A stretch of DNA of 64,000 nt from Schmidtea nova (GCA_044892505.1 CM097884.1:29760001-29824000); one strand, 5' to 3'. Positions 1 to 61,344 are shown, numbered from the stretch's first letter. The notes: generated by a model not told the origin, from the letters alone. A program made the numbers and translations.

Positions 1-645
1 GAGACGGTAAATAGTGAAAGCAGTTTTGAATGCAAATCAGTTGAAGAAAGCTGGAGTCAAGTTGGTGCAAAGGCAGTTGAAGTTGGTTCAGAATTCAGAA
101 GCGTGATTGTAGAATGTTCAAGTGAATATACAATTAGTATGAGAGAAAGTCAGGTAGACCAAGTAATAGAAACTGAAGAAGTCGGTGTAATGACAGTAGG
201 ATTGATAGTGATAGATGAGTCATCGGTGTTTGAATTGAGGTGCTGCACAGTTGAATGTGAAACTGTAGAAATCGTAGAAGAAATAATTCCTTTAGAGGCA
301 AAGGAAGAGGAATCAGAAAGATTGTTAATTGAGAATGAAAGTGTAAGCTGGGAGATTCCAATGCTAGATATTGCTACTACAACAGTTAAGCCGACATTAG
401 AAGATATTAGCACAGAAAATGTAATTGAGCATGTTGAATATAGTGGTGAATGGTGCCGAGAAATTAAGCATGAAAGTGAAATGTTTGAAACAGAGAAATC
501 AGTTTACTCAACAACGATCATATCATCAGATGAAGACATTAAATATTGCTCAGTTGAAATACAATTCGAAGAAACAAAGTCTCGCAACATAGAATCTGGC
601 TACGAAATCAAGTCAACAATGAAAGAATGTTACAGCGAAACAGAG
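1..645 (+). CDS. Repeat exon, partial (3' 215 codons)
   Basis: Open frame from base 1 (ETVNSES...) to donor GAG|gtaaat at 645/646. Confidence 0.8.
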
Positions 646-3600
646 GTAAATAAAATAAATTCATTTTTACAAATAATGTCACTTATTCACTGCCTAAAAT
701 CTATCATGATGTCTATAAAGATAAATACTGTTTTGAAACCTTTATCATAATATTTAATTTTTTAATCATATTTAATCATTGTTTATTTATTAACCTCTTC
801 TTTGCAATTTTATGTCTTAGTTTTATTAATTTACAAAATATTTCGAGTCATTTTAGAACTGTTTTCTTGTGTTTAGATTAAATCTGAAAACATTGCAACT
901 GAAACTGGAATAACAGAATTGATACATACGAGCTTGGAAAAAGATACAAAAGCTTCAAATAAGTTAACTGACTATAGAGCAGAGGCCATTGACATGAGCA
1001 GTGAATCATTCAAAGATAGTGAAATTGTAGAAGTTTCTTTCGAAAAACTCAAAGACACAGTTGACTTTAGCGGTAGTGTAGAAAGTAAAATGATTGAAGT
1101 AGGAACAGAAACTTTCGGAGAAAAGCATAATGTATTCATCGATACGCTTACAAGTCATGAAGCTGAAATTAAATTCGAAGAAACTTTGACTGAGTTCATG
1201 TATGAGACGGTAAATAGTGAAAGCAGTTTTGAATGCAAATCAGTTGAAGAAAGCTGGAGTCAAGTTGGTGCAAAGGCAGTTGAAGTTGGTTCAGAATTCA
1301 GAAGCGTGATTGTAGAATGTTCAAGTGAATATACAATTAGTATGAGAGAAAGTCAGGTAGACCAAGTAATAGAAACTGAAGAAGTCGGTGTAATGACAGT
1401 AGGATTGATAGTGATAGATGAGTCATCGGTGTTTGAATTGAGGTGCTGCACAGTTGAATGTGAAACTGTAGAAATCGTAGAAGAAATAATTCCTTTAGAG
1501 GCAAAGGAAGAGGAATCAGAAAGATTGTTAATTGAGAATGAAAGTGTAAGCTGGGAGATTCCAATGTTAGATATTGCTACTACAACAGTTAAGCCGACAT
1601 TAGAAGATATTAGCACAGAAAATGTAATTGAGCATGTTGAATATAGTGGTGAATGGTGCCGAGAAATTAAGCATGAAAATGAAATGTTTGAAACAGAGAA
1701 ATCAGTTTACTCAACAACGATCATATCATCAGATGAAGACATTAAATATTGCTCAGTTGAAATACAATTCGAAGAAACAAAGTCTCGCAACATAGAATCT
1801 GGCTACGAAATCAAGTCAACAATGAAAGAATGTTACAGCGAAACAGAGGTAAATAAAATAAATTCATTTTTACAAATAATGTCACTTATTCACTGCCAAA
1901 AATCTATCATGATGTCTTTAAAGATAAATACTGTTTTGAAACCTTTATCATAATATTTAATTTTTTAATCATATTTAATCATTGTTTATTTATTAACCTC
2001 TTCTTTGCAATTTTATGTCTTAGTTTTATTAATTTACAAAATATTTCGAGTCATTTTAGAACTGTTTTCTTGTGTTTAGATTAAATCTGAAAACATTGCA
2101 ACTGAAACTGGAATAACAGAATTGATACATACGAGCTTGGAAAAAGATACAAAAGCTTCAAATAAGTTAACTGACTATAGAGCAGAGGCCATTGACATGA
2201 GCAGTGAATCATTCAAAGATAGTGAAATTGTAGAAGTTTCTTTCGAAAAACTCAAAGACACAGTTGACTTTAGCGGTAGTGTAGAAAGTAAAATGATTGA
2301 AGTAGGAACAGAAACTTTCGGAGAAAAGCATAATGTATTCATCGATACGCTTACAAGTCATGAAGCTGAAATTAAATTCGAAGAAACTTTGACTGAGTTC
2401 ATGTATGAGACGGTAAATAGTGAAAGCAGTTTTGAATGCAAATCAGTTGAAGAAAGCTGGAGTCAAGTTGGTGCAAAGGCAGTTGAAGTTGGTTCAGAAT
2501 TCAGAAGCGTGATTGTAGAATGTTCAAGTGAATATACAATTAGTATGAGAGAAAGTCAGGTAGACCAAGTAATAGAAACTGAAGAAGTCGGTGTAATGAC
2601 AGTAGGATTGATAGTGATAGATGAGTCATCGGTGTTTGAATTGAGGTGCTGCACAGTTGAATGTGAAACTGTAGAAATCGTAGAAGAAATAATTCCTTTA
2701 GAGGCAAAGGAAGAGGAATCAGAAAGATTGTTAATTGAGAATGAAAGTGTAAGCTGGGAGATTCCAATGTTAGATATTGCTACTAAAACAGTTAAGCCGA
2801 CATTAGAAGATATTAGCACAGAAAATGTAATTGAGCATGTTGAATATAGTGGTGAATGGTGCCGAGAAATTAAGCATGAAAATGAAATGTTTGAAACAGA
2901 GAAATCAGTTTACTCAACAACGATCATATCATCAGATGAAGACATTAAATATTGCTCAGTTGAAATACAATTCGAAGAAACAAAGTCTCGCAACATAGAA
3001 TCTGGCTACGAAATCAAGTCAACAATGAAAGAATGTTACAGCGAAACAGAGGTAAATAAAATAAATTCATTTTTACAAATAATGTCACTTATTCACTGCC
3101 AAAAATCTATCATGATGTCTTTAAAGATAAATACTGTTTTGAAACCTTTATCATAATATTTAATTTTTTAATCATATTTAATCATTGTTTATTTATTAAC
3201 CTCTTCTTTGCAATTTTATGTCTTAGTTTTATTAATTTACAAAATATTTCGAGTCATTTTAGAACTCTTTTCTTGTGTTTAGATTAAATCTGAAAACATT
3301 GCAACTGAAACTGGAATAACAGAATTGATACATACGAGCTTGGAAAAAGATACAAAAGCTTCAAATAAGTTAACTGACTATAGAGCAGAGGCCATTGACA
3401 TGAGCAGTGAATCATTCAAAGATAGTGAAATTGTAGAAGTTTCTTTCGAAAAACTCAAAGACACAGTTGACTTTAGCGGTAGTGTAGAAAGTAAAATGAT
3501 TGAAGTAGGAACAGAAACTTTCGGAGAAAAGCATAATGTATTCATCGATATGCTTACAAGTCATGAAGCTGAAATTAAATTCGAAGAAACTTTGACTGAG

Positions 3601-6600
3601 TTCATGTGTGAGACGGTAAATAGTGAAAGCAGTTTTGAATGCAAATCAGTTGAAGAAAGCTGGAGTCAAGTTGGTGCAAAGGCAGTTGAAGTTGGTTCAG
3701 AATTCAGAAGCGTGATTGTAGAATGTTCAAGTGAATATACAATTAGTATGAGAGAAAGTCAGGTAGACCAAGCAATAGAAACTGAAGAAGTCGGTGTAAT
3801 GACAGTAGGATTGATAGTGATAGATGAGTCATCGGTGTTTGAATTGAGGTGCTGCACAGTTGAATGTGAAACTGTAGAAATCGTAGAAGAAATAATTCCT
3901 TTAGAGGCAAAGGAAGAGGAATCAGAAAGATTGTTAATTGAGAATGAAAGTGTAAGCTGGGAGATTCCAATGCTAGATATTGCTACTACAACAGTTAAGC
4001 CGACATTAGAAGATATTAGCACAGAAAATGTAATTGAGCATGTTGAATATAGTGGTGAATGGTGCCGAGAAATTAAGCATGAAAGTGAAATGTTTGAAAC
4101 AGAGAAATCAGTTTACTCAACAACGATCATATCATCAGATGAAGACATTAAATATTGCTCAGTTGAAATACAATTCGAAGAAACAAAGTCTTGCAACATA
4201 GAATCTGGCTACGAAATCAAGTCAACAATGAAAGAATGTTACAGCGAAACAGAGGTAAATAAAATAAATTCATTTTTACAAATAATGTCACTTATTCACT
4301 GCCAAAAATCTATCATGATGTCTTTAAAGATAAATACTGTTTTGAAACCTTTATCATAATATTTAATTTTTTAATCATATTTAATCATTGTTTATTTATT
4401 AACCTCTTCTTTGCAATTTTATGTCTTAGTTTTATTAATTTACAAAATATTTCGAGTCATTTTAGAACTGTTTTCTTGTGTTTAGATTAAATCTGAAAAC
4501 ATTGCAACTGAAACTGGAATAACAGAATTGATACATACGAGCTTGGAAAAAGATACAAAAGCTTCAAATAAGTTAACTGACTATAGAGCAGAGGCCATTG
4601 ACATGAGCAGTGAATCATTCAAAGATAGTGAAATTGTAGAAGTTTCTTTCGAAAAACTCAAAGACACAGTTGACTTTAGCGGTAGTGTAGAAAGTAAAAT
4701 GATTGAAGTAGGAACAGAAACTTTCGGAGAAAAGCATAATGTATTCATCGATATGCTTACAAGTCATGAAGCTGAAATTAAATTCGAAGAAACTTTGACT
4801 GAGTTCATGTGTGAGACGGTAAATAGTGAAAGCAGTTTTGAATGCAAATCAGTTGAAGAAAGCTGGAGTCAAGTTGGTGCAAAGGCAGTTGAAGTTGGTT
4901 CAGAATTCAGAAGCGTGATTGTAGAATGTTCAAGTGAATATACAATTAGTATGAGAGAAAGTCAGGTAGACCAAGCAATAGAAACTGAAGAAGTCGGTGT
5001 AATGACAGTAGGATTGATAGTGATAGATGAGTCATCGGTGTTTGAATTGAGGTGCTGCACAGTTGAATGTGAAACTGTAGAAATCGTAGAAGAAATAATT
5101 CCTTTAGAGGCAAAGGAAGAGGAATCAGAAAGATTGTTAATTGAGAATGAAAGTGTAAGCTGGGAGATTCCAATGCTAGATATATCTACTACAATAGTTA
5201 AGCCGACATTAGAAGATATTAGCACAGAAAATGTAATTGAGCATGTTGAATATAGTGGTGAATGGTGCCGAGAAATTAAGCATGAAAGTGAAATGTTTGA
5301 AACAGAGAAATCAGTTTACTCAACAACGATCATATCATCAGATGAAGACATTAAATATTGCTCAGTTGAAATACAATTCGAAGAAACAAAGTCTCGCAAC
5401 ATAGAATCTGGCTACGAAATCAAGTCAACAATGAAAGAATGTTACAGCGAAACAGAGGTAAATAAAATAAATTCATTTTTACAAATAATGTCACTTATTC
5501 ACTGCCTAAAATCTATCATGATGTCTTTAAAGATAAATACTGTTTTGAAACCTTTATCATAATATTTAATTTTTTAATCATATTTAATCATTGTTTATTT
5601 ATTAACCTCTTCTTTGCAATTTTATGTCTTAGTTTTATTAATTTACAAAATATTTCGAGTCATTTTAGAACTCTTTTCTTGTGTTTAGATTAAATCTGAA
5701 AACATTGCAACTGAAACTGGAATAACAGAATTGATACATACGAGCTTGGAAAAAGATACAAAAGCTTCAAATAAGTTAACTGACTATAGAGCAGAGGCCA
5801 TTGACATGAGCAGTGAATCATTCAAAGATAGTGAAATTGTAGAAGTTTCTTTCGAAAAACTCAAAGACACAGTTGACTTTAGCGGTAGTGTAGAAAGTAA
5901 AATGATTGAAGTAGGAACAGAAACTTTCGGAGAAAAGCATAATGTATTCATCGATACGCTTACAAGTCATGAAGCTGAAATTAAATTCGAAGAAACTTTG
6001 ACTGAGTTCATGCATGAGACGGTAAATAGTGAAAGCAGTTTTGAATGCAAATCAGTTGAAGAAAGCTGGAGTCAAGTTGGTGCAAAGGCAGTTGATGTTG
6101 GTTCAGAATTCAGAAGCGTGATTGTAGAATGTTCAAGTGAATATACAATTAGTATGAGAGAAAGTCAGGTAGACCAAGCAATAGAAACTGAAGAAGTCGG
6201 TGTAATGACAGTAGGATTGATAGTGATAGATGAGTCATCGGTGTTTGAATTGAGGTGCTGCACAGTTGAATGTGAAACTGTAGAAATCGTAGAAGAAATA
6301 ATTCCTTTAGAGGCAAAGGAAGAGGAATCAGAAAGATTGTTAATTGAGAATGAAAGTGTAAGCTGGGAGATTCCAATGCTAGATATTGCTACTACAACAG
6401 TTAAGCCGACATTAGAAGATATTAGCACAGAAAATGTAATTGAGCATGTTGAATATAGTGGTGAATGGTGCCGAGAAATTAAGCATGAAAGTGAAATGTT
6501 TGAAACAGAGAAATCAGTTTACTCAACAACGATCATATCATCAGATGAAGACATTAAATATTGCTCAGTTGAAATACAATTCGAAGAAACAAAGTCTCGC

Positions 6601-9600
6601 AACATAGAATCTGGCTACGAAATCAAGTCAACAATGAAAGAATGTTACAGCGAAACAGAGGTAAATAAAATAAATTCATTTTTACAAATAATGTCACTTA
6701 TTCACTGCCTAAAATCTATCATGATGTCTTTAAAGATAAATACTGTTTTGAAACCTTTATCATAATATTTAATTTTTTAATCATATTTAATCATTGTTTA
6801 TTTATTAACCTCTTCTTTGCAATTTTATGTCTTAGTTTTATTAATTTACAAAATATTTCGAGTCATTTTAGAACTGTTTTCTTGTGTTTAGATTAAATCT
6901 GAAAACATTGCAACTGAAACTGGAATAACAGAATTGATACATACGAGCTTGGAAAAAGATACAAAAGCTTCAAATAAGTTAACTGACTATAGAGCAGAGG
7001 CCATTGACATGAGCAGTGAATCATTCAAAGATAGTGAAATTGTAGAAGTTTCTTTCGAAAAACTCAAAGACACAGTTGACTTTAGCGGTAGTGTAGAAAG
7101 TAAAATGATTGAAGTAGGAACAGAAACTTTCGGAGAAAAGCATAATGTATTCATCGATACGCTTACAAGTCATGAAGCTGAAATTAAATTCGAAGAAACT
7201 TTGACTGAGTTCATGCATGAGACGGTAAATAGTGAAAGCAGTTTTGAATGCAAATCAGTTGAAGAAAGCTGGAGTCAAGTTGGTGCAAAGGCAGTTGATG
7301 TTGGTTCAGAATTCAGAAGCGTGATTGTAGAATGTTCAAGTGAATATACAATTAGTATGAGAGAAAGTCAGGTAGACCAAGCAATAGAAACTGAAGAAGT
7401 CGGTGTAATGACAGTAGGATTGATAGTGATAGATGAGTCATCGGTGTTTGAATTGAGGTGCTGCACAGTTGAATGTGAAACTGTAGAAATCGTAGAAGAA
7501 ATAATTCCTTTAGAGGCAAAGGAAGAGGAATCAGAAAGATTGTTAATTGAGAATGAAAGTGTAAGCTGGGAGATTCCAATGCTAGATATTGCTACTACAA
7601 CAGTTAAGCCGACATTAGAAGATATTAGCACAGAAAATGTAATTGAGCATGTTGAATATAGTGGTGAATGGTGCCGAGAAATTATGCATGAAAGTGAAAT
7701 GTTTGAAACAGAGAAATCAGTTTACTCAACAACGATCATATCATCAGATGAAGACATTAAATATTGCTCAGTTGAAATACAATTCGAAGAAACAAAGTCT
7801 CGCAACATAGAATCTGGCTACGAAATCAAGTCAACAATGAAAGAATGTTACAGCGAAACAGAGGTAAATAAAATAAATTCATTTTTACAAATAATGTCAC
7901 TTATTCACTGCCTAAAATCTATCATGATGTCTTTAAAGATAAATACTGTTTTGAAACCTTTATCATAATATTTAATTTTTTAATCATTTTTAATCATTGT
8001 TTATTTATTAACCTCTTCTTTGCAATTTTATGTCTTAGTTTTATTAATTTACAAAATATTTCGAGTCATTTTTAGAACTGTTTTCTTGTGTTTAGATTAA
8101 ATCTGAAAACATTGCAACTGAAACTGGAATAACAGAATTGATACATACGAGCTTGGAAAAAGATACAAAAGCTTCAAATAAGTTAACTGACTATAGAGCA
8201 GAGGCCATTGACATGAGCAGTGAATCATTCAAAGATAGTGAAATTGTAGAAGTTTCTTTCGAAAAACTCAAAGACACAGTTGACTTTAGCGGTAGTGTAG
8301 AAAGTAAAATGATTGAAGTAGGAACAGAAACTTTCGGAGAAAAGCATAATGTATTCATCGATACGCTTACAAGTCATGAAGCTGAAATTAAATTCGAAGA
8401 AACTTTGACTGAGTTCATGCATGAGACGGTAAATAGTGAAAGCAGTTTTGAATGCAAATCAGTTGAAGAAAGCTGGAGTCAAGTTGGTGCAAAGGCAGTT
8501 GAAGTTGGTTCAGAATTCAGAAGCGTGATTGTAGAATGTTCAAGTGAATATACAATTAGTATGAGAGAAAGTCAGGTAGACCAAGCAATAGAAACTGAAG
8601 AAGTCGGTGTAATGACAGTAGGATTGATAGTGATAGATGAGTCATCGGTGTTTGAATTGAGGTGCTGCACAGTTGAATGTGAAACTGTAGAAATCGTAAA
8701 AGAAATAATTCCTTTAGAGGCAAAGGAAGAGGAATCAGAAAGATTGTTAATTGAGAATGAAAGTGTAAGCTGGGAGATTCCAATGCTAGATATTGCTACT
8801 ACAACAGTTAAGCCGACATTAGAAGATATTAGCACAGAAAATGTAATTGAGCATGTTGAATATAGTGGTGAATGGTGCCGAGAAATTATGCATGAAAGTG
8901 AAATGTTTGAAACAGAGAAATCAGTTTACTCAACAACGATCATATCATCAGATGAAGACATTAAATATTGCTCAGTTGAAATACAATTCGAAGAAACAAA
9001 GTCTCGCAACATAGAATCTGGCTACGAAATCAAGTCAACAATGAAAGAATGTTACAGCGAAACAGAGGTAAATAAAATAAATTCATTTTTACAAATAATG
9101 TCACTTATTCACTGCCTAAAATCTATCATGATGTCTTTAAAGATAAATACTGTTTTGAAACCTTTATCATAATATTTAATTTTTTAATCATTTTTAATCA
9201 TTGTTTATTTATTAACCTCTTCTTTGCAATTTTATGTCTTAGTTTTATTAATTTACAAAATATTTCGAGTCATTTTTAGAACTGTTTTCTTGTGTTTAGA
9301 TTAAATCTGAAAACATTGCAACTGAAACTGGAATAACAGAATTGATACATACGAGCTTGGAAAAAGATACAAAAGCTTCAAATAAGTTAACTGACTATAG
9401 AGCAGAGGCCATTGACATGAGCAGTGAATCATTCAAAGATAGTGAAATTGTAGAAGTTTCTTTCGAAAAACTCAAAGACACAGTTGACTTTAGCGGTAGT
9501 GTAGAAAGTAAAATGATTGAAGTAGGAACAGAAACTTTCGGAGAAAAGCATAATGTATTCATCGATACGCTTACAAGTCATGAAGCTGAAATTAAATTCG

Positions 9601-12600
9601 AAGAAACTTTGACTGAGTTCATGCATGAGACGGTAAATAGTGAAAGCAGTTTTGAATGCAAATCAGTTGAAGAAAGCTGGAGTCAAGTTGGTGCAAAGGC
9701 AGTTGAAGTTGGTTCAGAATTCAGAAGCGTGATTGTAGAATGTTCAAGTGAATATACAATTAGTATGAGAGAAAGTCAGGTAGACCAAGCAATAGAAACT
9801 GAAGAAGTCGGTGTAATGACAGTAGGATTGATAGTGATAGATGAGTCATCGGTGTTTGAATTGAGGTGCTGCACAGTTGAATGTGAAACTGTAGAAATCG
9901 TAGAAGAAATAATTCCTTTAGAGGCAAAGGAAGAGGAATCAGAAAGATTGTTAATTGAGAATGAAAGTTTAAGCTGGGAGATTCCAATGCTAGATATTGC
10001 TACTACAACAGTTAAGCCGACATTAGAAGATATTAGCACAGAAAATGTAATTGAGCATGTTGAATATAGTGGTGAATGGTGCCGAGAAATTATGCATGAA
10101 ATTGAAATGTTTGAAACAGAGAAATCAGTTTACTCAACAACGATCATATCATCAGATGAAGACATTAAATATTGCTCAGTTGAAATACAATTCGAAGAAA
10201 CAAAGTCTCGCAACATAGAATCTGGCTACGAAATCAAGTCAACAATGAAAGAATGTTACAGCGAAACAGAGGTAAATAAAATAAATTCATTTTTACAAAT
10301 AATGTCACTTATTCACTGCCTAAAATCTATCATGATGTCTTTAAAGATAAATACTGTTTTGAAACCTTTATCATAATATTTAATTTTTTAATCATATTTA
10401 ATCATTGTTTATTTATTAACCTCTTCTTTGCAATTTTATGTCTTAGTTTTATTAATTTACAAAATATTTCGAGTCATTTTAGAACTGTTTTCTTGTGTTT
10501 AGATTAAATCTGAAAACATTGCAACTGAAACTGGAATAACAGAATTGATACATACGAGCTTGGAAAAAGATACAAAAGCTTCAAATAAGTTAACTGACTA
10601 TAGAGCAGAGGCCATTGACATGAGCAGTGAATCATTCAAAGATAGTGAAATTGTAGAAGTTTCTTTCGAAAAACTCAAAGACACAGTTGACTTTAGCGGT
10701 AGTGTAGAAAGTAAAATGATTGAAGTAGGAACAGAAACTTTCGGAGAAAAGCATAATGTATTCATCGATACGCTTACAAGTCATGAAGCTGAAATTAAAT
10801 TCGAAGAAACTTTGACTGAGTTCATGCATGAGACGGTAAATAGTGAAAGCAGTTTTGAATGCAAATCAGTTGAAGAAAGCTGGAGTCAAGTTGGTGCAAA
10901 GGCAGTTGAAGTTTGTTCAGAATTCAGAAGCGTGATTGTAGAATGTTCAAGTGAATATACAATTAGTATGAGAGAAAGTCAGGTAGACCAAGCAATAGAA
11001 ACTGAAGAAGTCGGTGTAATGACAGTAGGATTGATAGTGATAGATGAGTCATCGGTGTTTGAATTGAGGTGCTGCACAGTTGAATGTGAAACTGTAGAAA
11101 TCGTAGAAGAAATAATTCCTTTAGAGGCAAAGGAAGAGGAATCAGAAAGATTGTTAATTGAGAATGAAAGTGTAAGCTGGGAGATTCCAATGCTAGATAT
11201 TGCTACTACAACAGTTAAGCCGACATTAGAAGATATTAGCACAGAAAATGTAATTGAGCATGTTGAATATAGTGGTGAATGGTGCCGAGAAATTCTGCAT
11301 GAAAGTGAAATGTTTGAAACAGAGAAATCAGTTTACTCAACAACGATCATATCATCAGATGAAGACATTAAATATTGCTCAGTTGAAATACAATTCGAAG
11401 AAACAAAGTCTCGCAACATAGAATCTGGCTACGAAATCAAGTCAACAATGAAAGAATGTTACAGCGAAACAGAGGTAAATAAAATAAATTCATTTTTACA
11501 AATAATGTCACTTATTCACTGCCTAAAATCTATCATGATGTCTTTAAAGATAAATACTGTTTTGAAACCTTTATCATAATATTTAATTTTTTAATCATTT
11601 TTAATCATTGTTTATTTATTAACCTCTTCTTTGCAATTTTATGTCTTAGTTTTATTAATTTACAAAATATTTCGAGTCATTTTTAGAACTGTTTTCTTGT
11701 GTTTAGATTAAATCTGAAAACATTGCAACTGAAACTGGAATAACAGAATTGATACATACGAGCTTGGAAAAAGATACAAAAGCTTCAAATAAGTTAACTG
11801 ACTATAGAGCAGAGGCCATTGACATGAGCAGTGAATCATTCAAAGATAGTGAAATTGTAGAAGTTTCTTTCGAAAAACTCAAAGACACAGTTGACTTTAG
11901 CGGTAGTGTAGAAAGTAAAATGATTGAAGTAGGAACAGAAACTTTCGGAGAAAAGCATAATGTATTCATCGATACGCTTACAAGTCATGAAGCTGAAATT
12001 AAATTCGAAGAAACTTTGACTGAGTTCATGCATGAGACGGTAAATAGTGAAAGCAGTTTTGAATGCAAATCAGTTGAAGAAAGCTGGAGTCAAGTTGGTG
12101 CAAAGGCAGTTGAAGTTGGTTCAGAATTCAGAAGCGTGATTGTAGAATGTTCAAGTGAATATACAATTAGTATGAGAGAAAGTCAGGTAGACCAAGCAAT
12201 AGAAACTGAAGAAGTCGGTGTAATGACAGTAGGATTGATAGTGATAGATGAGTCATCGGTGTTTGAATTGAGGTGCTGCACAGTTGAATGTGAAACTGTA
12301 GAAATCGTAGAAGAAATAATTCCTTTAGAGGCAAAGGAAGAGGAATCAGAAAGATTGTTAATTGAGAATGAAAGTGTAAGCTGGGAGATTCCAATGCTAG
12401 ATATTGCTACTACAACAGTTAAGCCGACATTAGAAGATATTAGCACAGAAAATGTAATTGAGCATGTTGAATATAGTGGTGAATGGTGCCGAGAAATTAA
12501 GCATGAAAGTGAAATGTTTGAAACAGAGAAATCAGTTTACTCAACAACGATCATATCATCAGATGAAGACATTAAATATTGCTCAGTTGAAATACAATTC

Positions 12601-51600: not shown

Positions 51601-54600
51601 TCAAAGACACAGTTGACTTTAGCGGTAGTGTAGAAAGTAAAATGATTGAAGTAGGAACAGAAACTTTCGGAGAAAAGCATAATGTATTCATCGATACGCT
51701 TACAAGTCATGAAGCTGAAATTAAATTCGAAGAAACTTTGACTGAGTTCATGTGTGAGACGGTAAATAGTGAAAGCAGTTTTGAATGCAAATCAGTTGAA
51801 GAAAGCTGGAGTCAAGTTGGTGCAAAGGCAGTTGAAGTTGGTTCAGAATTCAGAAGCGTGATTGTAGAATGTTCAAGTGAATATACAATTAGTATGAGAG
51901 AAAGTCAGGTAGACCAAGCAATAGAAACTGAAGAAGTCGGTGTAATGACAGTAGGATTGATAGTGATAGATGAGTCATCGGTGTTTGAATTGAGGTGCTG
52001 CACAGTTGAATGTGAAACTGTAGAAATCGTAGAAGAAATAATTCCTTTAGAGGCAAAGGAAGAGGAATCAGAAAGATTGTTAATTGAGAATGAAAGTGTA
52101 AGCTGGGAGATTCCAATGCTAGATATTGCTACTACAACAGTTAAGCCGACATTAGAAGATATTAGCACAGAAAATGTAATTGAGCATGTTGAATATAGTG
52201 GTGAATGGTGCCGAGAAATTAAGCATGAAAGTGAAATGTTTGAAACAGAGAAATCAGTTTACTCAACAACGATCATATCATCAGATGAAGACATTAAATA
52301 TTGCTCAGTTGAAATACAATTCGAAGAAACAAAGTCTCGCAACATAGAATCTGGCTACGAAATCAAGTCAACAATGAAAGAATGTTACAGCGAAACAGAG
52401 GTAAATAAAATAAATTCATTTTTACAAATAATGTCACTTATTCACTGCCTAAAATCTATCATGATGTCTTTAAAGATAAATACTGTTTTGAAACCTTTAT
52501 CATAATATTTAATTTTTTAATCATATTTAATCATTGTTTATTTATTAACCTCTTCTTTGCAATTTTATGTCTTAGTTTTATTAATTTACAAAATATTTCG
52601 AGTCATTTTTAGAACTGTTTTCTTGTGTTTAGATTAAATCTGAAAACATTGCAACTGAAACTGGAATAACAGAATTGATACATACGAGCTTGGAAAAAGA
52701 TACAAAAGCTTCAAATAAGTTAACTGACTATAGAGCAGAGGCCATTGACATGAGCAATGAATCATTCAAAGATAGTGAAATTGTAGAAGTTTCTTTCGAA
52801 AAACTCAAAGACACAGTTGACTTTAGCGGTAGTGTAGAAAGTAAAATGATTGAAGTAGGAACAGAAACTTTCGGAGAAAAGCATAATGTATTCATCGATA
52901 CGCTTACAAGTCATGAAGCTGAAATTAAATTCGAAGAAACTTTGACTGAGTTCATGTGTGAGACGGTAAATAGTGAAAGCAGTTTTGAATGCAAATCAGT
53001 TGAAGAAAGCTGGAGTCAAGTTGGTGCAAAGGCAGTTGAAGTTGGTTCAGAATTCAGAAGCGTGATTGTAGAATGTTCAAGTGAATATACAATTAGTATG
53101 AGAGAAAGTCAGGTAGACCAAGCAATAGAAACTGAAGAAGTCGGTGTAATGACAGTAGGATTGATAGTGATAGATGAGTCATCGGTGTTTGAATTGAGGT
53201 GCTGCACAGTTGAATGTGAAACTGTAGAAATCGTAGAAGAAATAATTCCTTTAGAGGCAAAGGAAGAGGAATCAGAAAGATTGTTAATTGAGAATGAAAG
53301 TGTAAGCTGGGAGATTCCAATGCTAGATATTGCTACTACAACAGTTAAGCCGACATTAGAAGATATTAGCACAGAAAATGTAATTGAGCATGTTGAATAT
53401 AGTGGTGAATGGTGCCGAGAAATTAAGCATGAAAGTGAAATGTTTGAAACAGAGAAATCAGTTTACTCAACAACGATCATATCATCAGATGAAGACATTA
53501 AATATTGCTCAGTTGAAATACAATTCGAAGAAACAAAGTCTCGCAACATAGAATCTGGCTACGAAATCAAGTCAACAATGAAAGAATGTTACAGCGAAAC
53601 AGAGGTAAATAAAATAAATTCATTTTTACAAATAATGTCACTTATTCACTGCCTAAAATCTATCATGATGTCTTTAAAGATAAATACTGTTTTGAAACCT
53701 TTATCATAATATTTAATTTTTTAATCATATTTAATCATTGTTTATTTATTAACCTCTTCTTTGCAATTTTATGTCTTAGTTTTATTAATTTACAAAATAT
53801 TTCGAGTCATTTTTAGAACTGTTTTCTTGTGTTTAGATTAAATCTGAAAACATTGCAACTGAAACTGGAATAACAGAATTGATACATACGAGCTTGGAAA
53901 AAGATACAAAAGCTTCAAATAAGTTAACTGACTATAGAGCAGAGGCCATTGACATGAGCAATGAATCATTCAAAGATAGTGAAATTGTAGAAGTTTCTTT
54001 CGAAAAACTCAAAGACACAGTTGACTTTAGCGGTAGTGTAGAAAGTAAAATGATTGAAGTAGGAACAGAAACTTTCGGAGAAAAGCATAATGTATTCATC
54101 GATACGCTTACAAGTCATGAAGCTGAAATTAAATTCGAAGAAACTTTGACTGAGTTCATGTGTGAGACGGTAAATAGTGAAAGCAGTTTTGAATGCAAAT
54201 CAGTTGAAGAAAGCTGGAGTCAAGTTGGTGCAAAGGCAGTTGAAGTTGGTTCAGAATTCAGAAGCGTGATTGTAGAATGTTCAAGTGAATATACAATTAG
54301 TATGAGAGAAAGTCAGGTAGACCAAGCAATAGAAACTGAAGAAGTCGGTGTAATGACAGTAGGATTGATAGTGATAGATGAGTCATCGGTGTTTGAATTG
54401 AGGTGCTGCACAGTTGAATGTGAAACTGTAGAAATCGTAGAAGAAATAATTCCTTTAGAGGCAAAGGAAGAGGAATCAGAAAGATTGTTAATTGAGAATG
54501 AAAGTGTAAGCTGGGAGATTCCAATGCTAGATATTGCTACTACAACAGTTAAGCCGACATTAGAAGATATTAGCACAGAAAATGTAATTGAGCATGTTGA

Positions 54601-57600
54601 ATATAGTGGTGAATGGTGCCGAGAAATTAAGCATGAAAGTGAAATGTTTGAAACAGAGAAATCAGTTTACTCAACAACGATCATATCATCAGATGAAGAC
54701 ATTAAATATTGCTCAGTTGAAATACAATTCGAAGAAACAAAGTCTCGCAACATAGAATCTGGCTACGAAATCAAGTCAACAATGAAAGAATGTTACAGCG
54801 AAACAGAGGTAAATAAAATAAATTCATTTTTACAAAAAATGTCACTTAATCACTGCCTAAAATCTATTATGATATTTTTTAAGATCACTAAATTACTAAT
54901 TATTTTTAATAATTTTTTCATGTAAATATATGATTTTTATATTTTATCATGAAACTTTATTATATCTTTTTTTATTTTATTTTGTTCATGCGATGACAAC
55001 GGTTTTCATCATAATATTCTTTGCAAATTTTGTATTTTTTTCTTTTATAATTTTTCTTTTTTTTCTTTTATAATTTTTCTTTAGGCGTCCGTCGAAGGAA
55101 TTCATAGTTACAAATTAAATAAATAACATTATAAAAATTTTTCAATCATTGAAATACTTTTAATACGTTATATATAAATCTGATTCCGTGTATTATTTTT
55201 TTATAATGGATGAAGTGTCACTTACACCGAAAAGAATTTTCATCTCGTAGGTTTAGTAACATACACGATATTCAATAGGTTATAAATATTCAAAGAGGTT
55301 ATTAAAATTGGTCAAGTGCAAAAGAGTAAGTTATTGAAAAAAAATTGAAATAACTTAAATATCAATAGAAATTGTTTTTTAAGAATTATTGATGAATAAA
55401 TTAAAATCCCCTTGAACTTAACCATAGTCATTGAGGATAGTTAATTAATTTTTTATGTCTTATCTGTCGCATTATTATTATTTCATTTTTTATTGTGTTC
55501 ATAGTTTTATAAAATAATATTATTTTATCGATTATTAAATTTTGATATTTAAAGATAATTTAACATTTAGTCTTTATTGTTTTAATCATTATTTTCTTTT
55601 TAAAAATAATTCGCGGGTTATCAATTTTTTTTCCGACTGAATCTGAATGGCAATGAGAAAACACATGAAATACGTAGATATAATTTTTAATTGTGAATAT
55701 CTGAAATTGAGTGGCAATCGGGGTGTTTGTCGAAGTATAAATTGAATACGGTTTTGGTAGATTTTAAAAACTATATATTTCTTTAAATCAATTTTTGATT
55801 TTAATTTTTTTATTGTTTAATTTTTAATTTTTCACTGTTTTTCGTTGAAATTTTTATTTTATTCAGCATTTTTTCATCCGTTTTCTTTCTCTAATGCGTT
55901 TGAAATTCATTTTTTTTTATTAATTCAAGTAATTATATATTTTTATAGTTAAATTTTTATTATTTCTTTTTTGAGAATGCACTGAATTTTTATCTAATTA
56001 TTTTAATTCGTAGATCTGTTTACTTTAATAAATAAATTTATTTGCATTTTTTAATTCAAATTTTTTATATAATCATTTTTCTGTTCATTTTTTTAACTAT
56101 AAAGGCATTTTGTATCTTTACTTTTATAGATAAAATATGATACATTCGAAATGGAAACAACATTTGAAAATCAACGAAGAGATTCAGCTATTCAAGTTAA
56201 CTATCGTTCTAAAACTTCAGATTTTACTCAGATGTTTGATGTATCTTCAACTGAAAATTCTGATACTGATTCTATTTTAACTAAGAGTGCTGAAGGTTTC
56301 TTAGAATTATCTGATCATTCTATGTCTGATGCAGATGATCTTGAATGGGCTGAAGTTGGTCTCGACCTAAATATTCTGCCAATTAATATTTCTACTCAAA
56401 CTGAAGATGAAATTGATTTTATTATGCAATATATTAAAACAACAACAAATTCAGAAATTATTAGAACAATTAAAGAATTAGTTTATGAAAATCTTGATCG
56501 GGCTGATGTGTCCATTGGAACCAGTTTTGATTTATCCTTTTTAGATTTCTTCCTTTCTTCGTTTGGGTTAGATCAAATTATAAATCGGTTAAGGTCATTA
56601 AGATACTTTGTTGATGAAATTCAAAATACTGATCTAAATCTCAGTCGATCTGTTGCTATTCAGTCTGAACTCAAAGAACTTTTAAATGTTGGAACATCTT
56701 GTTCTTTGAAAGATAATTATTGCAGTAATCATGATATTGGAGTTTCAACTGACTGTGAAGATTTTTATTCTTGTTTTAATATATACGAAGAAGACTCTGA
56801 GTTGTCTTTAATCCTTAAATCCGATTATCAAAATATTAAACAAAATAGTATTGGTGAAACTCAAACATCTTTAATTGAATTTAGATCTACAGGAATTCAA
56901 ACTATTTCGTCACTTAGAGAACATACTTCTATTTTATCAGCAGTTGATATTCCGTTTGACACCATTTCAGAATCTTTCGTTCGGGAATCTTTCATGGAAA
57001 GTATCGACGATTCTATTTCTAAAGTAGAATTTTATCGAGGAACTAATTGTGGAAAAATAATATCTGATGAAGAAACTCAAACAGAACTAGATAATCGAAG
57101 TTGTGGTGTTCAAATTTCATTTGAAGATCTTGATTTGCCTGAGGTTATTTCAAATTTCGATCGTTTCGAAAATAGTCGATGGATTAGAGAGTCTCAATTT
57201 ACTGAAAGTTTTTATACTCATGAATCTAATATCTTTACAAATATAGTACATTTACCTGATTCTTCTCTTAGAGTAGACGATGAAACTCAAACTAAATTTG
57301 GTTATACCAGATCAATAGCATCCCAAACAATGACAATAGATCTTACTGAACCATATTGGCAAGAAACTATTTCACGATTTGAGAATTATTTTTCGTTCTC
57401 TGTGCAAAATCAAGATATCTTAATATTTCCAAAATCGGATAAATCCCCGTGTTCTCAAACGGATTCGGTTTATCTCAAAGAATGCATTAGTGATTCTAGC
57501 ATGGTTGAATGGACTGAAAAAACAGAAACAACTGAGATTTATCATCCTATTATTAATGAGCCCTTAAAAGATACTGTTACGAAACTTACAGAAAGCTTTG

Positions 57601-60600
57601 ATGAAGATGAAATAACAGAAATACATACAAGAGAAGTCAATGTATTTGAAGAAGAAACATTTGAAACGTACTCCAGAGTAACTGAATCTTCCCAGACAGA
57701 TCCATTTTTTGAAGAAGCAGAATCCATGTTTGATCAAGACTATAACAGGTATTCTAATAGTTTTAACCTTCATGTTTTGCTACTTATTGTAATATTTGTT
57801 GGCGACGCTCTGATATGGGTCACCCGATTTTCAAAAAAATAATTAAATAAAAAATAATTAATTAAATAAAAAATAATTAATTAAAATAATTAATTAATTA
57901 AAATTAATTAATTATATTTAATTAATAATTAAATTAATAATAATTANNNNNNNNNNNNNNNNNNNNNNNNNNNNNNNNNNNNNNNNNNNNNNNNNNNNNN
58001 NNNNNNNNNNNNNNNNNNNNNNNNNNNNNNNNNNNNNNNNNNNNNNNNNNNNNNNNNNNNNNNNNNNNNNNNNNNNNNNNNNNNNNNNNNNNNNNNNNNN
58101 NNNNNNNNNNNNNNNNNNNNNNNNNNNNNNNNNNNNNNNNNNNNNNNNNNNNNNNNNNNNNNNNNNNNNNNNNNNNNNNNAATATTAAATAATAATAAAT
58201 AATAATTAAATAATAATAATTAATAATAATTAAATAATAATTATTAAATTAATAATTATTAAATTAATAATAATTTAATTAATAATAATTTAATTAATTA
58301 ATTAAAATAATTAATTAAAATAATTTTAAAAAATAATTAATTAAGTAATTTGGTTATGTTTTAATTTTGGTTTCATTTTAATTTAAATTTAATTAATTAT
58401 TTTTTTGAAAATCGGGTGACCCATATCAGAGCGTCGCCTATTTGTTTATCTAATATTATAATTCCCTTGATATGTATGTCATTCTGTTTCTGATTCACTA
58501 GAATTATTTAAAATTAAGAAAACATGAATTTTACCAAAGCATTATTTTAATCTACATGAAATTTTGATATTAGTGGTTCTGGAGCGGAAAGCAGCCTCAT
58601 TAATATGCAATATGAGCTGATATAATAATATTTTTAAATAAGTAATATTTTATATTGATACAAACATCTTTTAAAATATCCAGCAAGAAGTAAGAAGTCA
58701 ATTGGAAAGAAATTCTTATTGGAGTGGTCAGGATCTTTTTAAGATCGAAATATTCTATTAAATAAACATGGCGAAGAAAGACTTAACACTTTTACCTTAT
58801 TATTTTAAATAAACTCCGCTAACGACAAAACAGTGCGTAATTATGAAAATTATGAATATAAATAAAACGAGATCAAAGGTGAAACCAAAATATAATTATT
58901 ATATTTTAATATTGAATAATTATACTTTTACGTGGTGCGCCCAATAAGTCGTGAGACTAAAATAAAAAGACTTAAGATATTAACACAAAACTTTGTATTT
59001 AGAACAAGCATGGTAAATAGGCATCATTTCTCAAAATAATTTATTTCTGCACTGACACAATTTTCCCAGCGAATAACGAGGTTTTCGAAGGCGTTTTTGA
59101 AGAATTCTGGAGGCTTTACTCCCAGAAAACTCTCCACGGCTGCTCTCAAATCATGTTTGTTGGCAAACACCTGGCCCCGCAGATGCTTCTTAAGATGGTT
59201 AAACAGGAAAAATCGGAGGGAGCCAAATCGGGGCTGTATGGTGGATGGGGAAGCAAATTGAGCCTGCAGCGCTCAATTTTGGCCATGGAAACGCTGCTGG
59301 TGTGGATGGGAGCATTATCGTGTAGAAAATAGAGATCACGTACTCTGATCTTGCGTTGTGCCTTCCTTGCTTGCTGCACGATGTTGGAGTAGTAAGAACT
59401 ATTGATCTTCACGCCGGATTCAGCAAAGCCAGTCAGAATAATGTCATTGGTGTCCCAAAACACCGTCAACATGAGAGCCTTTTGGTGGCAAGTTGAGGAC
59501 CGCATTTTCAGTGAGCTGCTTTCTCCTGGCAGTTTCCATTCTTGAGACTCTCTTTTAGATTCGGGGACATAAAGGGACAACGGTGTCTCGTCCACAGTGA
59601 TGATATTATCAATGAAAAGATCTCCAACATTGGTCCTGATCTGCAGATTCTCCAAGCAGCATTCCAAGCGTCGTTGTCGCATTTCCACCGTTAAGAAGCG
59701 TGGCACAAAACGGGAACATAGTTTTCGAATATCACTTTCAGTGAGGAGAGTATGCACAGTGCCTTTGCTCACATTTAGACGGGTTGTGAGCTCTCTTGTC
59801 GTTATTTTTCTCTCGTTTTGCACGATTGTCTGCAGCTTTTGCGTTATTTTTTCATCAATTTCTGAGGGTCTTCCAGATCTTTCTTACTCCACCACGGAGG
59901 TTCTACCACTCTGAAAGTAATTGAACCAACGATAAATTGTTGCTGTGGATGGGCACTTTTGTTGGTAAACAGCTTTCAGTTCAGAAAGAACCTCTTTTCT
60001 ATTTTTTCCTTTCAGAAAGAGAAAGCGAATAACGCTACGGTATTGAATAGTTTCCAGAGGCATTTTTCGAATGTTCGCAAAAATATACTTAAACAATAAT
60101 GGATTATTAAAACAAAATACATTTTCTTTACCTATATATGTTGAAGTTTAAATATGTCTGTATCAATTTTTTACTATTATTATTTCTATATTAGTCTCAC
60201 GACTTATTGGGCGCACCACGTATGTGCAATTTAACAATTTTTTAGTAATAAATTTAGAAATTTATTACATTTAAAACTATTTTAATTCAATAATATTCAT
60301 ATTAATCTTTATAAGACTAGTTCAAAAATTTTTTGGTTATTAGGCACACGATATTTTGACACATCCTTTTATTAATTGTGTATATTTTCCATATATTTTT
60401 ATATATTTATATATTTAGACCACTTAAATTATTGATGAAAACTCATGAACGACAGTTCAATCTAACGGAAGTGATTGATTTTTCGCTACCATTGGATATC
60501 ACTCTCCAGCGAGTGTCTCATCCAAGAAATAAAACCAAAGTCTCTGACATTGACGTAGCGATTCATCGCGGATGGATAGATACACAGAAATCAATGTATT

Positions 60601-61253
60601 GTAATCCTTCTTCAGATGAAAAAATGCCTTTCGAAATGGCTTGGAGGACAAATAAAATAGAGATTTCAGAAAAAGTTTGTCCCAACAATAGAAGCTTTGG
60701 ATTGTATGTCGAAAAAACGATAACGAAAACTGAAAAACTTCGAATTAAAGATGTTCTTAATACGGAAACTGGAGATTTGTATGACGAAACATTAGCAAGA
60801 GATCAAGGTTTATTAATGGATAATGGATCATTTTTCGATAAACAGGCGAAAAAAGAAATAAATTTCGAAATGGCTCTTCTTAATCATTATATTGAAGTTC
60901 ATAAAGATACAGAGATCATTAATTTTTTCGAAAATGACAAAAAGTTTTTTAAAATCAATTTTGTCTTTGATAAAGAAACTGGAGAATCTTTTGATTTTCA
61001 CACAGCGTCAGAAAGAGGATTAGTGAATATTCTTAATTCAACTTTCAAAGACACTGAGAGAAGATGTGATATAAAATTTGAAGAGGCTGTTCAAAGAGGA
61101 ATACTCGAAATAGAAAGGATACATTCAATCAATAATTTCTTTTTCCTCCATAAAACTAGTGACAATGTTATTGAAAGAGAACGATTGTTCAGTTCCGAAT
61201 CTTGTGCATCGAAATCTCAGTCAATTCAATCGACAGAGTATTTTAGAATGTAA
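1..61253 (+). CDS. Spliced giant repetitive protein gene, 5' part outside window: 45+ near-identical 324-aa acidic repeat exons, a TQT-motif-rich exon and a C-terminal plectin/plakin-repeat-like exon; >=~15,600 aa in window
   Basis: Every repeat exon is bounded by tttag|ATTAAA and GAG|gtaaat in phase 0. The last repeat joins 56130 in phase 0 (tttatag|ATAAAA). 57748 AG|gtattc joins 60419 tttag|A in phase 2, rebuilding an AGA codon. Stop TAA at 61251-61253. No exonic stop or indel anywhere. Confidence 0.8.
646..876 (+). other. Representative 231-nt GT-AG phase-0 intron of the repeat unit (232 nt in some copies)
   Basis: Starts gtaaat, ends gttttcttgtgtttag; T-rich, in-frame stops, sharp compositional switch from the purine-rich exon. 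Confidence 0.88.
877..1848 (+). CDS. Repeat exon copy 1 (324 aa, IKSENIATETG...KECYSETE)
   Basis: AG/GT bounded, 972 nt, no stop; variants FMY, DQV, HEN. Confidence 0.82.
2080..3051 (+). CDS. Repeat exon copy 2
   Basis: Same splice sites; variants FMY, DQV, ATK, HEN. Confidence 0.82.
3283..4254 (+). CDS. Repeat exon copy 3
   Basis: Same splice sites; variants DML, KSC. Confidence 0.82.
4486..5457 (+). CDS. Repeat exon copy 4
   Basis: Same splice sites; variants DML, DIS, TIV. Confidence 0.82.
5689..6660 (+). CDS. Repeat exon copy 5
   Basis: Same splice sites; variants FMH, AVD. Confidence 0.82.
6892..7863 (+). CDS. Repeat exon copy 6
   Basis: Same splice sites; variants FMH, AVD, EIM. 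Confidence 0.82.
8096..9067 (+). CDS. Repeat exon copy 7
   Basis: Same splice sites; variants FMH, IVK, EIM. Confidence 0.82.
9300..10271 (+). CDS. Repeat exon copy 8
   Basis: Same splice sites; variants FMH, ESL, EIM, HEI. Confidence 0.82.
10503..11474 (+). CDS. Repeat exon copy 9
   Basis: Same splice sites; variants FMH, EVC, EIL. Confidence 0.82.
11707..12678 (+). CDS. Repeat exon copy 10
   Basis: Same splice sites; variant FMH. Confidence 0.82.
12910..13881 (+). CDS. Repeat exon copy 11
   Basis: Same splice sites; variant FMH, silent aag>aaa. Confidence 0.82.
14113..15084 (+). CDS. Repeat exon copy 12
   Basis: Same splice sites; consensus protein. Confidence 0.82.
15317..16288 (+). 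CDS. Repeat exon copy 13
   Basis: Same splice sites; consensus protein. Confidence 0.82.
16520..17491 (+). CDS. Repeat exon copy 14
   Basis: Same splice sites; variant PLD, silent agc>agt. Confidence 0.82.
17723..18694 (+). CDS. Repeat exon copy 15
   Basis: Same splice sites; consensus protein. Confidence 0.82.
18926..19897 (+). CDS. Repeat exon copy 16
   Basis: Same splice sites; silent agc>agt. Confidence 0.82.
20129..21100 (+). CDS. Repeat exon copy 17
   Basis: Same splice sites; silent agc>agt. Confidence 0.82.
21332..22303 (+). CDS. Repeat exon copy 18
   Basis: Same splice sites; consensus protein. Confidence 0.82.
22535..23506 (+). CDS. Repeat exon copy 19
   Basis: Same splice sites; consensus protein. 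Confidence 0.82.
23738..24709 (+). CDS. Repeat exon copy 20
   Basis: Same splice sites; consensus protein. Confidence 0.82.
24941..25912 (+). CDS. Repeat exon copy 21
   Basis: Same splice sites; consensus protein. Confidence 0.82.
26145..27116 (+). CDS. Repeat exon copy 22
   Basis: Same splice sites; consensus protein. Confidence 0.82.
27349..28320 (+). CDS. Repeat exon copy 23
   Basis: Same splice sites; variants IRT, RVE. Confidence 0.82.
28553..29524 (+). CDS. Repeat exon copy 24
   Basis: Same splice sites; variant KEP. Confidence 0.82.
29757..30728 (+). CDS. Repeat exon copy 25
   Basis: Same splice sites; consensus protein. Confidence 0.82.
30961..31932 (+). CDS. Repeat exon copy 26
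   Basis: Same splice sites; variants IRT, RVE. Confidence 0.82.
32165..33136 (+). CDS. Repeat exon copy 27
   Basis: Same splice sites; consensus protein. Confidence 0.82.
33369..34340 (+). CDS. Repeat exon copy 28
   Basis: Same splice sites; variant KPK, silent gtt>gtc. Confidence 0.82.
34573..35544 (+). CDS. Repeat exon copy 29
   Basis: Same splice sites; consensus protein. Confidence 0.82.
35777..36748 (+). CDS. Repeat exon copy 30
   Basis: Same splice sites; variant DRK. Confidence 0.82.
36981..37952 (+). CDS. Repeat exon copy 31
   Basis: Same splice sites; variant DRK. Confidence 0.82.
38185..39156 (+). CDS. Repeat exon copy 32
   Basis: Same splice sites; variant RVE. Confidence 0.82.
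39389..40360 (+). CDS. Repeat exon copy 33
   Basis: Same splice sites; consensus protein. Confidence 0.82.
40593..41564 (+). CDS. Repeat exon copy 34
   Basis: Same splice sites; variant EEA. Confidence 0.82.
41797..42768 (+). CDS. Repeat exon copy 35
   Basis: Same splice sites; variants MSN, YCL. Confidence 0.82.
43001..43972 (+). CDS. Repeat exon copy 36
   Basis: Same splice sites; variants MSN, YCL. Confidence 0.82.
44205..45176 (+). CDS. Repeat exon copy 37
   Basis: Same splice sites; variants MSN, YCL. Confidence 0.82.
45409..46380 (+). CDS. Repeat exon copy 38
   Basis: Same splice sites; variant MSN. Confidence 0.82.
46613..47584 (+). CDS. Repeat exon copy 39
   Basis: Same splice sites; variant MSN. 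Confidence 0.82.
47817..48788 (+). CDS. Repeat exon copy 40
   Basis: Same splice sites; variants MSN, LDF. Confidence 0.82.
49021..49992 (+). CDS. Repeat exon copy 41
   Basis: Same splice sites; variant MSN. Confidence 0.82.
50225..51196 (+). CDS. Repeat exon copy 42
   Basis: Same splice sites; variants MSN, YCL. Confidence 0.82.
51429..52400 (+). CDS. Repeat exon copy 43
   Basis: Same splice sites; variant MSN. Confidence 0.82.
52633..53604 (+). CDS. Repeat exon copy 44
   Basis: Same splice sites; variant MSN. Confidence 0.82.
53837..54808 (+). CDS. Repeat exon copy 45 (last)
   Basis: Same splice sites; variant MSN; followed by a diverged, longer intron. Confidence 0.82.
54809..56129 (+). 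other. Unique 1321-nt phase-0 intron after the last repeat
   Basis: gtaaat...cttttatag; very AT/T-rich; first ~70 nt are a diverged version of the array intron. Confidence 0.75.
56130..57748 (+). CDS. Penultimate exon (~540 aa), acidic Ser/Thr-rich, with many TQT/IQT/SQT-like motifs
   Basis: Acceptor 21 nt (7 codons) upstream of the ORF-track ATG, in frame (IKYDTFE-METT); donor AG|gtattc in phase 2. Confidence 0.78.
57801..58438. mobile_element. Non-autonomous TIR element (MITE/foldback-like; GG termini and 8-bp TSD resemble the Merlin superfamily)
   Basis: 46-bp perfect TIR ggcgacgctctgatatgggtcacccgattttcaaaaaaataattaa at 57801-57846 and its reverse complement ending at 58438; TSD tatttgtt at 57793-57800 and 58439-58446. 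Confidence 0.88.
57947..58180. other. Assembly gap (234 N) within almost pure A/T low-complexity sequence
   Basis: Run of N flanked by aattaat/aataat-type repeats. Confidence 0.99.
58931..60220 (-). mobile_element. Full-length Tc1/mariner-superfamily mariner (DD34D) element, 1290 bp
   Basis: 30-bp perfect TIRs cgtggtgcgcccaataagtcgtgagactaa (58931-58960, 60191-60220); TA on both flanks; transposase inside. Confidence 0.97.
59024..60063 (-). pseudogene. Mariner transposase pseudogene (~346 aa when reconstructed)
   Basis: N-terminal HTH region (YRSVIRFLFLKG...TIYRWF), FVPRFL, TVDET, HDNAPIH, HPPYSPDLAPSD with 34 residues between the 2nd and 3rd Asp. In-frame TAA at 59884-59886 and a 1-nt frameshift just after SDF. 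Confidence 0.95.
60419..61253 (+). CDS. Terminal exon with three plectin/plakin-repeat-like modules
   Basis: Acceptor atatttag|A in phase 2. Modules such as IKDVLNTETGDLYDETLARDQGLL...EINFEMALLNHYI and INFVFDKETGESFDFHTASERGLV...IKFEEAVQRGIL fit the D-x-x-TG...EA-x-x-x-GLI plectin-repeat pattern. Confidence 0.78.
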
Positions 61254-61338: not shown

Positions 61339-61344
61339 AATAAA
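61339..61344 (+). terminator. Candidate polyadenylation signal AATAAA of the giant gene
   Basis: First AATAAA ~85 nt after the stop, followed by T/GT-rich sequence; the AT-rich context lowers specificity. Confidence 0.5.

What the first reader, a model, noticed from the sequence alone, without database searches (positions are those of the whole stretch)
1..61253. A 55-kb apparent satellite is a tandem exon-intron array encoding one giant (>=15,600 aa) protein that ends in plectin-like repeats
Seen: 45 full 972-nt exons plus a 645-nt partial, all stop-free and phase 0/0, then phase-compatible joins to two unique exons and a stop. Sum in window: 215 + 45x324 + ~817 = ~15,600 aa, about 47 kb of CDS, with the N-terminus still upstream. 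Known: plectin repeats occur in plakins (plectin, desmoplakin, epiplakin, VAB-10A, some Shot isoforms) and typically bind intermediate filaments. Inference: a titin-scale cytolinker or structural filament whose rod is an unfamiliar 324-aa acidic repeat rather than spectrin, Ig or coiled-coil repeats. I do not recognise this architecture. Standard annotation would mask it or split it into 45 false genes.
Basis: partly seen in the sequence, partly recalled or inferred. Interest (0 to 1): 0.92.

Follow-up and report, generated by a model that had tools for sequence, protein, structure and literature searches.

The report
Giant repeated-exon gene with plectin-type tail
What looks like 55 kb of satellite DNA is the end of a real, old protein-coding gene built from one exon copied at least 45 times; it may encode a cell-scaffold protein of at least 15,600 residues (perhaps larger than titin), but no RNA data could be laid on it to show that the copies are spliced into one message.

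Summary
In detail: 45 full 972-nt exons plus a 645-nt partial, all open, phase 0/0, with 231/232-nt GT-AG introns, then two unique exons; 15,612 codons in the window. The gap lies inside an intronic foldback insertion whose two arms and 8-bp target duplication flank it, so both sides belong together and frame does not depend on it. The 324-aa exon has relatives in seven other lineages (36-72% identity) with the same splice sites, diverged introns, dN/dS 0.11-0.31 and mostly tandem contigs: an old coding cassette, not a satellite. The last exon holds three double plectin-repeat modules, not a canonical plakin repeat domain. The penultimate exon has 11 LC8-type motifs (3 expected); the repeat carries an 11-residue look-alike with E for Q. 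Best reading: a giant cytolinker whose spacer is a disordered motif ladder, possibly stiffened by dynein light chains. The scan earlier noted what is probably the 5' part of this same gene 60-110 kb upstream; if continuous, about 124 units and 42,000-43,000 residues (not checked by me).

The parts
1..645 (+). Partial repeat exon (last 215 codons); the array continues upstream of the window
646..54808 (+). 45 cassettes of a 231/232-nt GT-AG intron plus a 972-nt phase 0/0 exon (first exon 877-1848, last 53837-54808); 324-aa acidic repeat, exons 99.7% identical on average, 28 distinct full units
54809..56129 (+). Exit intron (1321 nt), same donor as the array introns
56130..57748 (+). Unique exon A, 539 codons + 2 nt; acidic, predicted disordered, 11 LC8-type xQx motifs, 4 of them TQT; no homologue found
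57749..60418 (+). Last intron (phase 2); holds two transposon insertions and the assembly gap
57801..58438 (.). AT-rich foldback (MITE-like) insertion with matching arms and an 8-bp target duplication; contains the gap 57947-58180
58929..60222 (-). Mariner element with inverted ends and TA target site; broken transposase
60419..61253 (+). Terminal exon B: three double plectin-repeat modules (about residues 26-85, 107-162, 175-234 of the exon) and the stop
61339..61344 (+). Candidate polyadenylation hexamer

Best explanation
The window is the 3' part of one giant gene. Shown: the 972-nt unit is an old protein-coding exon, kept in tandem and homogenised within each lineage by unequal crossing-over or conversion, and the last exon encodes plectin-type repeats. 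Inferred: the short introns are spliced out one by one, giving a protein of at least 15,612 aa (about 42,000-43,000 if the upstream scan notes belong to it). The product would be a cytoplasmic plakin-type linker: a plakin head upstream (from notes, not checked), a very long acidic disordered spacer, an LC8-motif cluster, and a plectin-repeat tail that anchors at junctions or filaments. Most likely mechanism for the spacer: two chains are paired and stiffened by many copies of a dynein light chain (LC8/DYNLL or a paralogue), nucleated at the canonical Q motifs of exon A and propagated over weak E-type motifs spaced about 11 residues apart, as shown for KANK1; copy number of the exon would then set the length (about 3 micrometres for this window at KANK1's 0.23 nm per residue). 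My odds: single gene with this exon order 85%; most units in one mRNA 65%; LC8 binds exon A 70%; LC8-type binding along the repeat 35-40%.
For: Open symmetric exons and consensus splice sites. Same AG and GT positions in seven other lineages at 36-72% identity; dN/dS 0.11-0.31 with near-saturated dS and introns only 52-61% alike in global alignment, close to shuffled scores; circular or dimeric contigs show tandem arrangement there too. Variants are shared by neighbouring units (Spearman 0.40, none of 2000 permutations as high) and the longest exact repeat is 4.6 kb. Tail: Pfam Plectin 20.7 bits, cut-off 20.5; 120 plectin-repeat relatives; profile hits desmoplakin, plectin, envoplakin at E 3e-24 to 4e-13; three modules at pLDDT over 90. 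Exon A: 4 TQT versus 0.2 expected, 11 xQx versus 3.1, 8 sites meeting the published flank rules versus 0.7. Repeat: autocorrelation at lag 11 (z 3.6), E at the Q position in 63 rule-fitting sites versus 15 expected over eight related sequences. KANK1 forms a rod from weak non-canonical motifs with 3-4 residue linkers (PMC12803091).
Against: Within the array, variants look neutral (27 N: 5 S against 2181: 567 possible; no stop in 32 alleles has p = 0.15). The LC8 paper reports a clear preference for Q at position 0 and that high charge limits binding (PMC6607443); the repeat has E there and is strongly acidic. The eight sequences are not independent, and the held-out motif test passed in one direction only (p 0.002 and 0.27). 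The tail does not superpose on solved plakin repeat domains (best Foldseek E 0.03, TM 0.11; VIA Z 2.2 or less) and has no supported place in the tree. The N-terminal head is outside the window.
Confidence: 0.55

Rival explanations
1. One real gene, but the symmetric exons are skipped in variable numbers, so cells make a ladder of much shorter isoforms and the full-length giant is rare or absent.
For: Every exon is phase 0/0, so any number can be skipped in frame; within-array variation is neutral-like; no RNA evidence.
Against: Introns are short and carry the same strong donor and acceptor in every unit, which favours removal one by one (general knowledge of intron definition); no copy among 45 has decayed.
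Confidence: 0.2
2. The giant protein is made, but the repeat is a plain acidic disordered spring or spacer (PEVK-like) or pairs with itself, and LC8 binds only the unique flanking exons.
For: Net charge -0.16 per residue, on the disordered side of the charge-hydropathy line; Q-type motifs are confined to exon A and E-type motifs to the repeat.
Against: Only 3 prolines, many V/I/T and a conserved spaced motif, which is more constraint than a random spring needs; hydropathy is close to the boundary.
Confidence: 0.15
3. The cassette is a real exon, but the copy number is inflated by assembly error or is a recent, nearly neutral run-away expansion in this individual.
For: Exons are 99.7% identical and several neighbouring units are identical; raw long reads were not seen.
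Against: 28 distinct units with position-dependent variants and a longest exact repeat of 4.6 kb, shorter than usual long reads; tandem arrangement in other lineages.
Confidence: 0.07
4. The units are separate small genes or a satellite derived from a dead exon.
For: Satellite-like homogeneity.
Against: No start codon at the exon start in this lineage and only 231 nt between units; splice sites kept at the same codon in lineages down to 36% identity; dN/dS well below 1.
Confidence: 0.03

Closest known systems
Plakins and spectraplakins (plectin, desmoplakin, epiplakin, Shot plakin-repeat isoforms of 8,846 aa, PMC2173965)
   Same: Plectin-type repeats at the C-terminus; very large linker protein; plakin head probably upstream (scan note only).
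   Different: Spacer is an acidic non-helical 324-aa repeat instead of spectrin repeats or coiled coil; tail is three two-repeat modules, not the canonical globular plakin repeat domain; far longer.
Uncharacterised short spiralian plakins (about 800 aa, SH3_10 + one terminal plectin-repeat block; Tubulanus XP_074658080.1, Lamellibrachia KAI0232922.1; Atlas cluster mostly Mollusca)
   Same: Best single-domain scores for exon B; same three-module block 30-50 residues from the C-terminus; an acidic linker of 29-233 aa sits between head and tail.
   Different: Linker here would be tens of thousands of residues; the tree does not place exon B in their clade (long branch, no support), so orthology is open.
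KANK1 L2, ASCIZ, Nup159 (multivalent LC8 clients; PMC12803091, PMC6607443)
   Same: Disordered region with many short motifs in LC8 register, spaced about 11 residues apart.
   Different: KANK1 has about 15 sites; here about 12-16 per unit over at least 45 units, with E in place of Q; binding untested.
Titin PEVK / nebulin tandem exon arrays; Spirostomum GSBP1/2 (PMC9946354); PKZILLA-1 (45,212 aa, bioRxiv 2024.01.29.577497)
   Same: Giant size; symmetric tandem exons (titin, nebulin, from general knowledge); a giant repeated backbone that binds many copies of a small protein (GSBP).
   Different: No sequence relationship found; no Ig, Fn3, kinase or enzyme domains in the window.

Membership tests
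Plakin family | Plectin (plakin) repeats | tested here: met
   Pfam PF00681 20.7 bits vs cut-off 20.5; 120 relatives, those scanned all carry Plectin; profile hits human desmoplakin/plectin/envoplakin
Plakin family | Canonical 4.5-repeat globular plakin repeat domain | tested here: not met
   Model has three separate two-repeat modules; best Foldseek hit desmoplakin E 0.03, TM 0.11; VIA Z at most 2.2. Caveat: module packing in the model is uncertain (pTM 0.44)
Plakin family | N-terminal plakin domain (spectrin repeats + SH3) | not testable with these tools
   Lies upstream of the window; only an unchecked scan note (s1-356151) reports a short plakin-type head
Plakin family | Coiled-coil or spectrin rod | tested here: not met
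   Repeat has no Pfam, PDB or Atlas match and an acidic, beta-branched composition
Plakin family | Intermediate-filament or junction binding | not testable with these tools
   Needs experiment
Short spiralian plakin (SH3_10 + terminal plectin block) | Terminal block orthologous to this clade | tested here: inconclusive
   Best per-domain scores but long unsupported branch outside the clade in a quick tree
Multivalent LC8 client | Several TQT-like anchors with permitted flanks in a disordered region | tested here: met
   Exon A: 8 rule-fitting Q sites vs 0.7 expected
Multivalent LC8 client | Q at position 0 in the repeated unit | tested here: not met
   4 Q sites vs 2.7 expected in the family; E instead, 63 vs 15
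Multivalent LC8 client | Measured LC8 binding | not testable with these tools
   No complex prediction or assay available
Non-coding satellite | No coding constraint | tested here: not met
   dN/dS 0.11-0.31 and conserved splice sites between lineages
Single giant transcript | Spliced junction reads through the array and across the gap intron | tested here: inconclusive

The most novel reading that the evidence does not exclude
One continuous gene of about 124 cassettes is spliced whole and translated into a protein of about 42,000-43,000 residues (near 4.8 MDa), longer than titin and close to PKZILLA-1; it is a plakin-type linker whose spacer becomes a micrometre-long rod by binding over a thousand dynein-light-chain dimers through an E-variant motif, with exon copy number setting its length.
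Probability: 0.2. Interest if true: 0.93.

Novelty: new variant of a known kind. Interest (0 to 1): 0.7.

Why it matters
If spliced whole, this is among the largest animal proteins predicted, hidden in what annotation would mask as satellite or split into dozens of genes. It would add a new spacer type to plakin-like linkers, and it offers a direct test of the question raised by the KANK1 work: whether weak multivalent LC8 motifs are used to build long rods in other assemblies. The unit is small, soluble-looking and conserved across lineages, so the binding question can be tested with one or two units. Weighing against a higher score: this genome has many similar giant tandem genes in the scan's notes, the 5' part was probably reported already, and expression is unproven.

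Tried and rejected
The gap was not filled or looked up; the read stretch was chosen to stop short of it. The spliced model was searched exon by exon by reference; the joined step (joined cDNA, joined protein, junction patterns and the junction peptide) was left out. Word shares (0.94, 0.72, 0.64, 0.64) bracket the exon-only expectation of 0.65, but the run type is unknown, so this is a hint at most. Blank searches: exon B by word index and in metagenome contigs; exon A homologues; repeat against Pfam, PDB and Atlas; repeat against exon A; Rfam on 55900-64000; single-sequence fold of exon B, pLDDT 31. The weak PDB hit (E 0.81) is noise. My first regular-expression test for the sub-motif was chosen after seeing the sequence, so I rely on the autocorrelation and instead. 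No paper on a planarian plakin-like giant was found. I did not identify the organism or the hosts of the related contigs; 'flatworm' rests on scan notes and base composition.

Full report
Observation. The window holds a tandem array of period 1203/1204 up to 54808. Each unit is a 972-nt exon and a 231/232-nt intron with the same GT donor and AG acceptor; all 45 full exons and the 645-nt partial are open and free of indels, while the introns vary by one base in length. The exit intron leads to exon A (56130-57748) and, after a phase-2 intron, to exon B (60419-61253); the sum is 46,839 nt, 15,612 codons, with a polyadenylation-type hexamer 89 nt after the stop. An open frame of 324 codons by chance has probability about 4e-13.

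The gap. It lies in the last intron, so frame does not depend on its length. Its flanks are the two arms of one AT-rich foldback element (57801-58438): the first 40 bases of the arms are identical and the same 8-bp target duplication stands on both outer sides. That is what one insertion into one site gives, so the two sides very probably belong together. A mariner element (58929-60222) fills most of the rest of the intron.

Is the unit a real exon? Yes. The 324-aa repeat has relatives at 36-72% identity in unrelated public samples. In seven lineages with a whole exon, an AG precedes the first codon and a GT follows the last, in phase 0, exactly as here. Exon lengths vary only by whole codons (969-981 nt); dN/dS is 0.11-0.31 with dS from 0.8 to saturation, and the introns differ in length (146-340 nt) and are little more alike than shuffles. 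Most of these contigs close on themselves with periods of 1115-1315 nt, and L003 is a dimer with two different introns: the tandem arrangement is shared, and each lineage homogenises its own copies. Within this array, variants are shared by neighbours (Spearman 0.40), there are 28 distinct units, and the longest exact repeat is 4.6 kb, which argues against a simple assembly artefact without proving the copy number. The within-array variants themselves look neutral (27 non-synonymous to 5 synonymous; no stop in 32 alleles, p = 0.15), so the evidence for selection comes from the comparison between lineages.

The tail. Exon B just passes the Pfam Plectin cut-off and finds 120 relatives, all those scanned carrying plectin repeats. 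Their alignment shows three modules of two repeats each; the profile hits desmoplakin, plectin and envoplakin, and the model folds the three modules at pLDDT over 90. It does not superpose on solved plakin repeat domains, so intermediate-filament binding is not implied; Shot carries plakin repeats that serve at adherens junctions (PMC2173965). The best single-domain matches are the C-terminal blocks of uncharacterised spiralian proteins of about 800 aa with a plakin SH3 head and a short acidic linker. A quick tree leaves exon B on a long unsupported branch, so orthology is open.

The spacer. The repeat is 24% D/E, pI 4.2, rich in V/I/T/S, with three prolines, just on the disordered side of the charge-hydropathy line, and matches no known family or fold. 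Exon A carries 11 LC8-type anchors against 3.1 expected, 4 TQT against 0.2, and 8 sites that meet the published flank rules against 0.7. The repeat has autocorrelation peaks at lags 11, 63, 97 and 108 (z 3.6-4.6) and a motif of the form V/I-D/E-x-S/G-S/T-E that sits in LC8 register but with E where LC8 clients have Q (63 sites against 15 expected over eight related sequences; none in exon A). A held-out test of the motif passed in one direction (p 0.002) and not the other (p 0.27). KANK1 is turned into a rod of over 50 nm from 220 residues by cooperative binding to weak non-canonical motifs with 3-4 residue linkers (PMC12803091); an 8-residue motif plus such a linker gives the 11-residue spacing seen here. 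Dynein-light-chain domains are expanded in trematodes and cestodes (PMC3510090), so a paralogue with altered preference is conceivable if the animal is a flatworm. Against this, Q at position 0 is clearly preferred and high charge disfavours binding (PMC6607443). I give LC8-type binding along the repeat 35-40%.

Expression. Untested. Four runs of one study hold the stretch, none on record as RNA; their word shares (0.94, 0.72, 0.64, 0.64) lie near the exon-only value of 0.65 for three of them, which is a hint only. The spliced model was searched exon by exon; the joined step was left out.

Size. Unchecked scan notes place a 1203-nt unit 37.6 kb upstream, a finding of over 11,000 codons with 28 cassettes and a short plakin-type head ending 60 kb upstream, and a cluster of QT motifs at -103 kb. 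If all of this is one continuous gene, it has about 28 + 50 + 46 = 124 units and about 42,000-43,000 residues, near 4.8 MDa at the unit's mean residue mass; PKZILLA-1 has 45,212 aa and is about 25% longer than titin (bioRxiv 2024.01.29.577497). I could not read that DNA, so this is an inference.

Verdict. A real coding exon array at the 3' end of a giant plakin-like gene with an undescribed spacer: a new variant of a known kind. The gene model is well supported, the full-length product is likely but unproven, and the LC8-ladder mechanism is a testable proposal. The same genome has several other giant tandem genes in the scan's notes, which tempers the surprise. Interest 0.7.

Noticed in passing
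window 63283-64000 (+): Remnant of a family-B DNA polymerase of the Polinton/organellar type, interrupted by a stop (Pfam DNA_pol_B_2, 28.2 bits).
   Followed up: partly
window 57749-57842 (+): If the donor at 57748 is not used, exon A reads on for 31 codons into a hydrophobic stretch partly made of the foldback arm, which could give a membrane-tailed isoform without the plectin block; probably incidental.
   Followed up: no
window 57801-58438: Non-autonomous foldback element with an 8-bp target duplication and a very AT-rich interior, where the assembly broke.
   Followed up: partly
L003:1-2640: A relative whose array has a dimer period (2499 nt): two exon variants 90-95% alike and two introns only 68% alike, a higher-order repeat.
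   Followed up: partly
L006:1-4966: Chimeric metagenome contig: the first 750 nt (35% GC) encode the repeat, the rest is bacterial (55-60% GC).
   Followed up: partly
P0126 (Lamellibrachia KAI0232922.1): A short plakin (SH3_10 + plectin block) that ends in a KASH domain (E 2e-20); either a nuclear-envelope isoform or a gene-model fusion.
   Followed up: no
window 877-1848, repeat unit: The unit shows traces of older internal duplication (lags 63, 97, 108, 171) and keeps several cysteines across all lineages.
   Followed up: partly
same genome, scan notes: At least eight other giant genes built from homogenised tandem units, three with plectin repeats; the tendency looks genome-wide.
   Followed up: no
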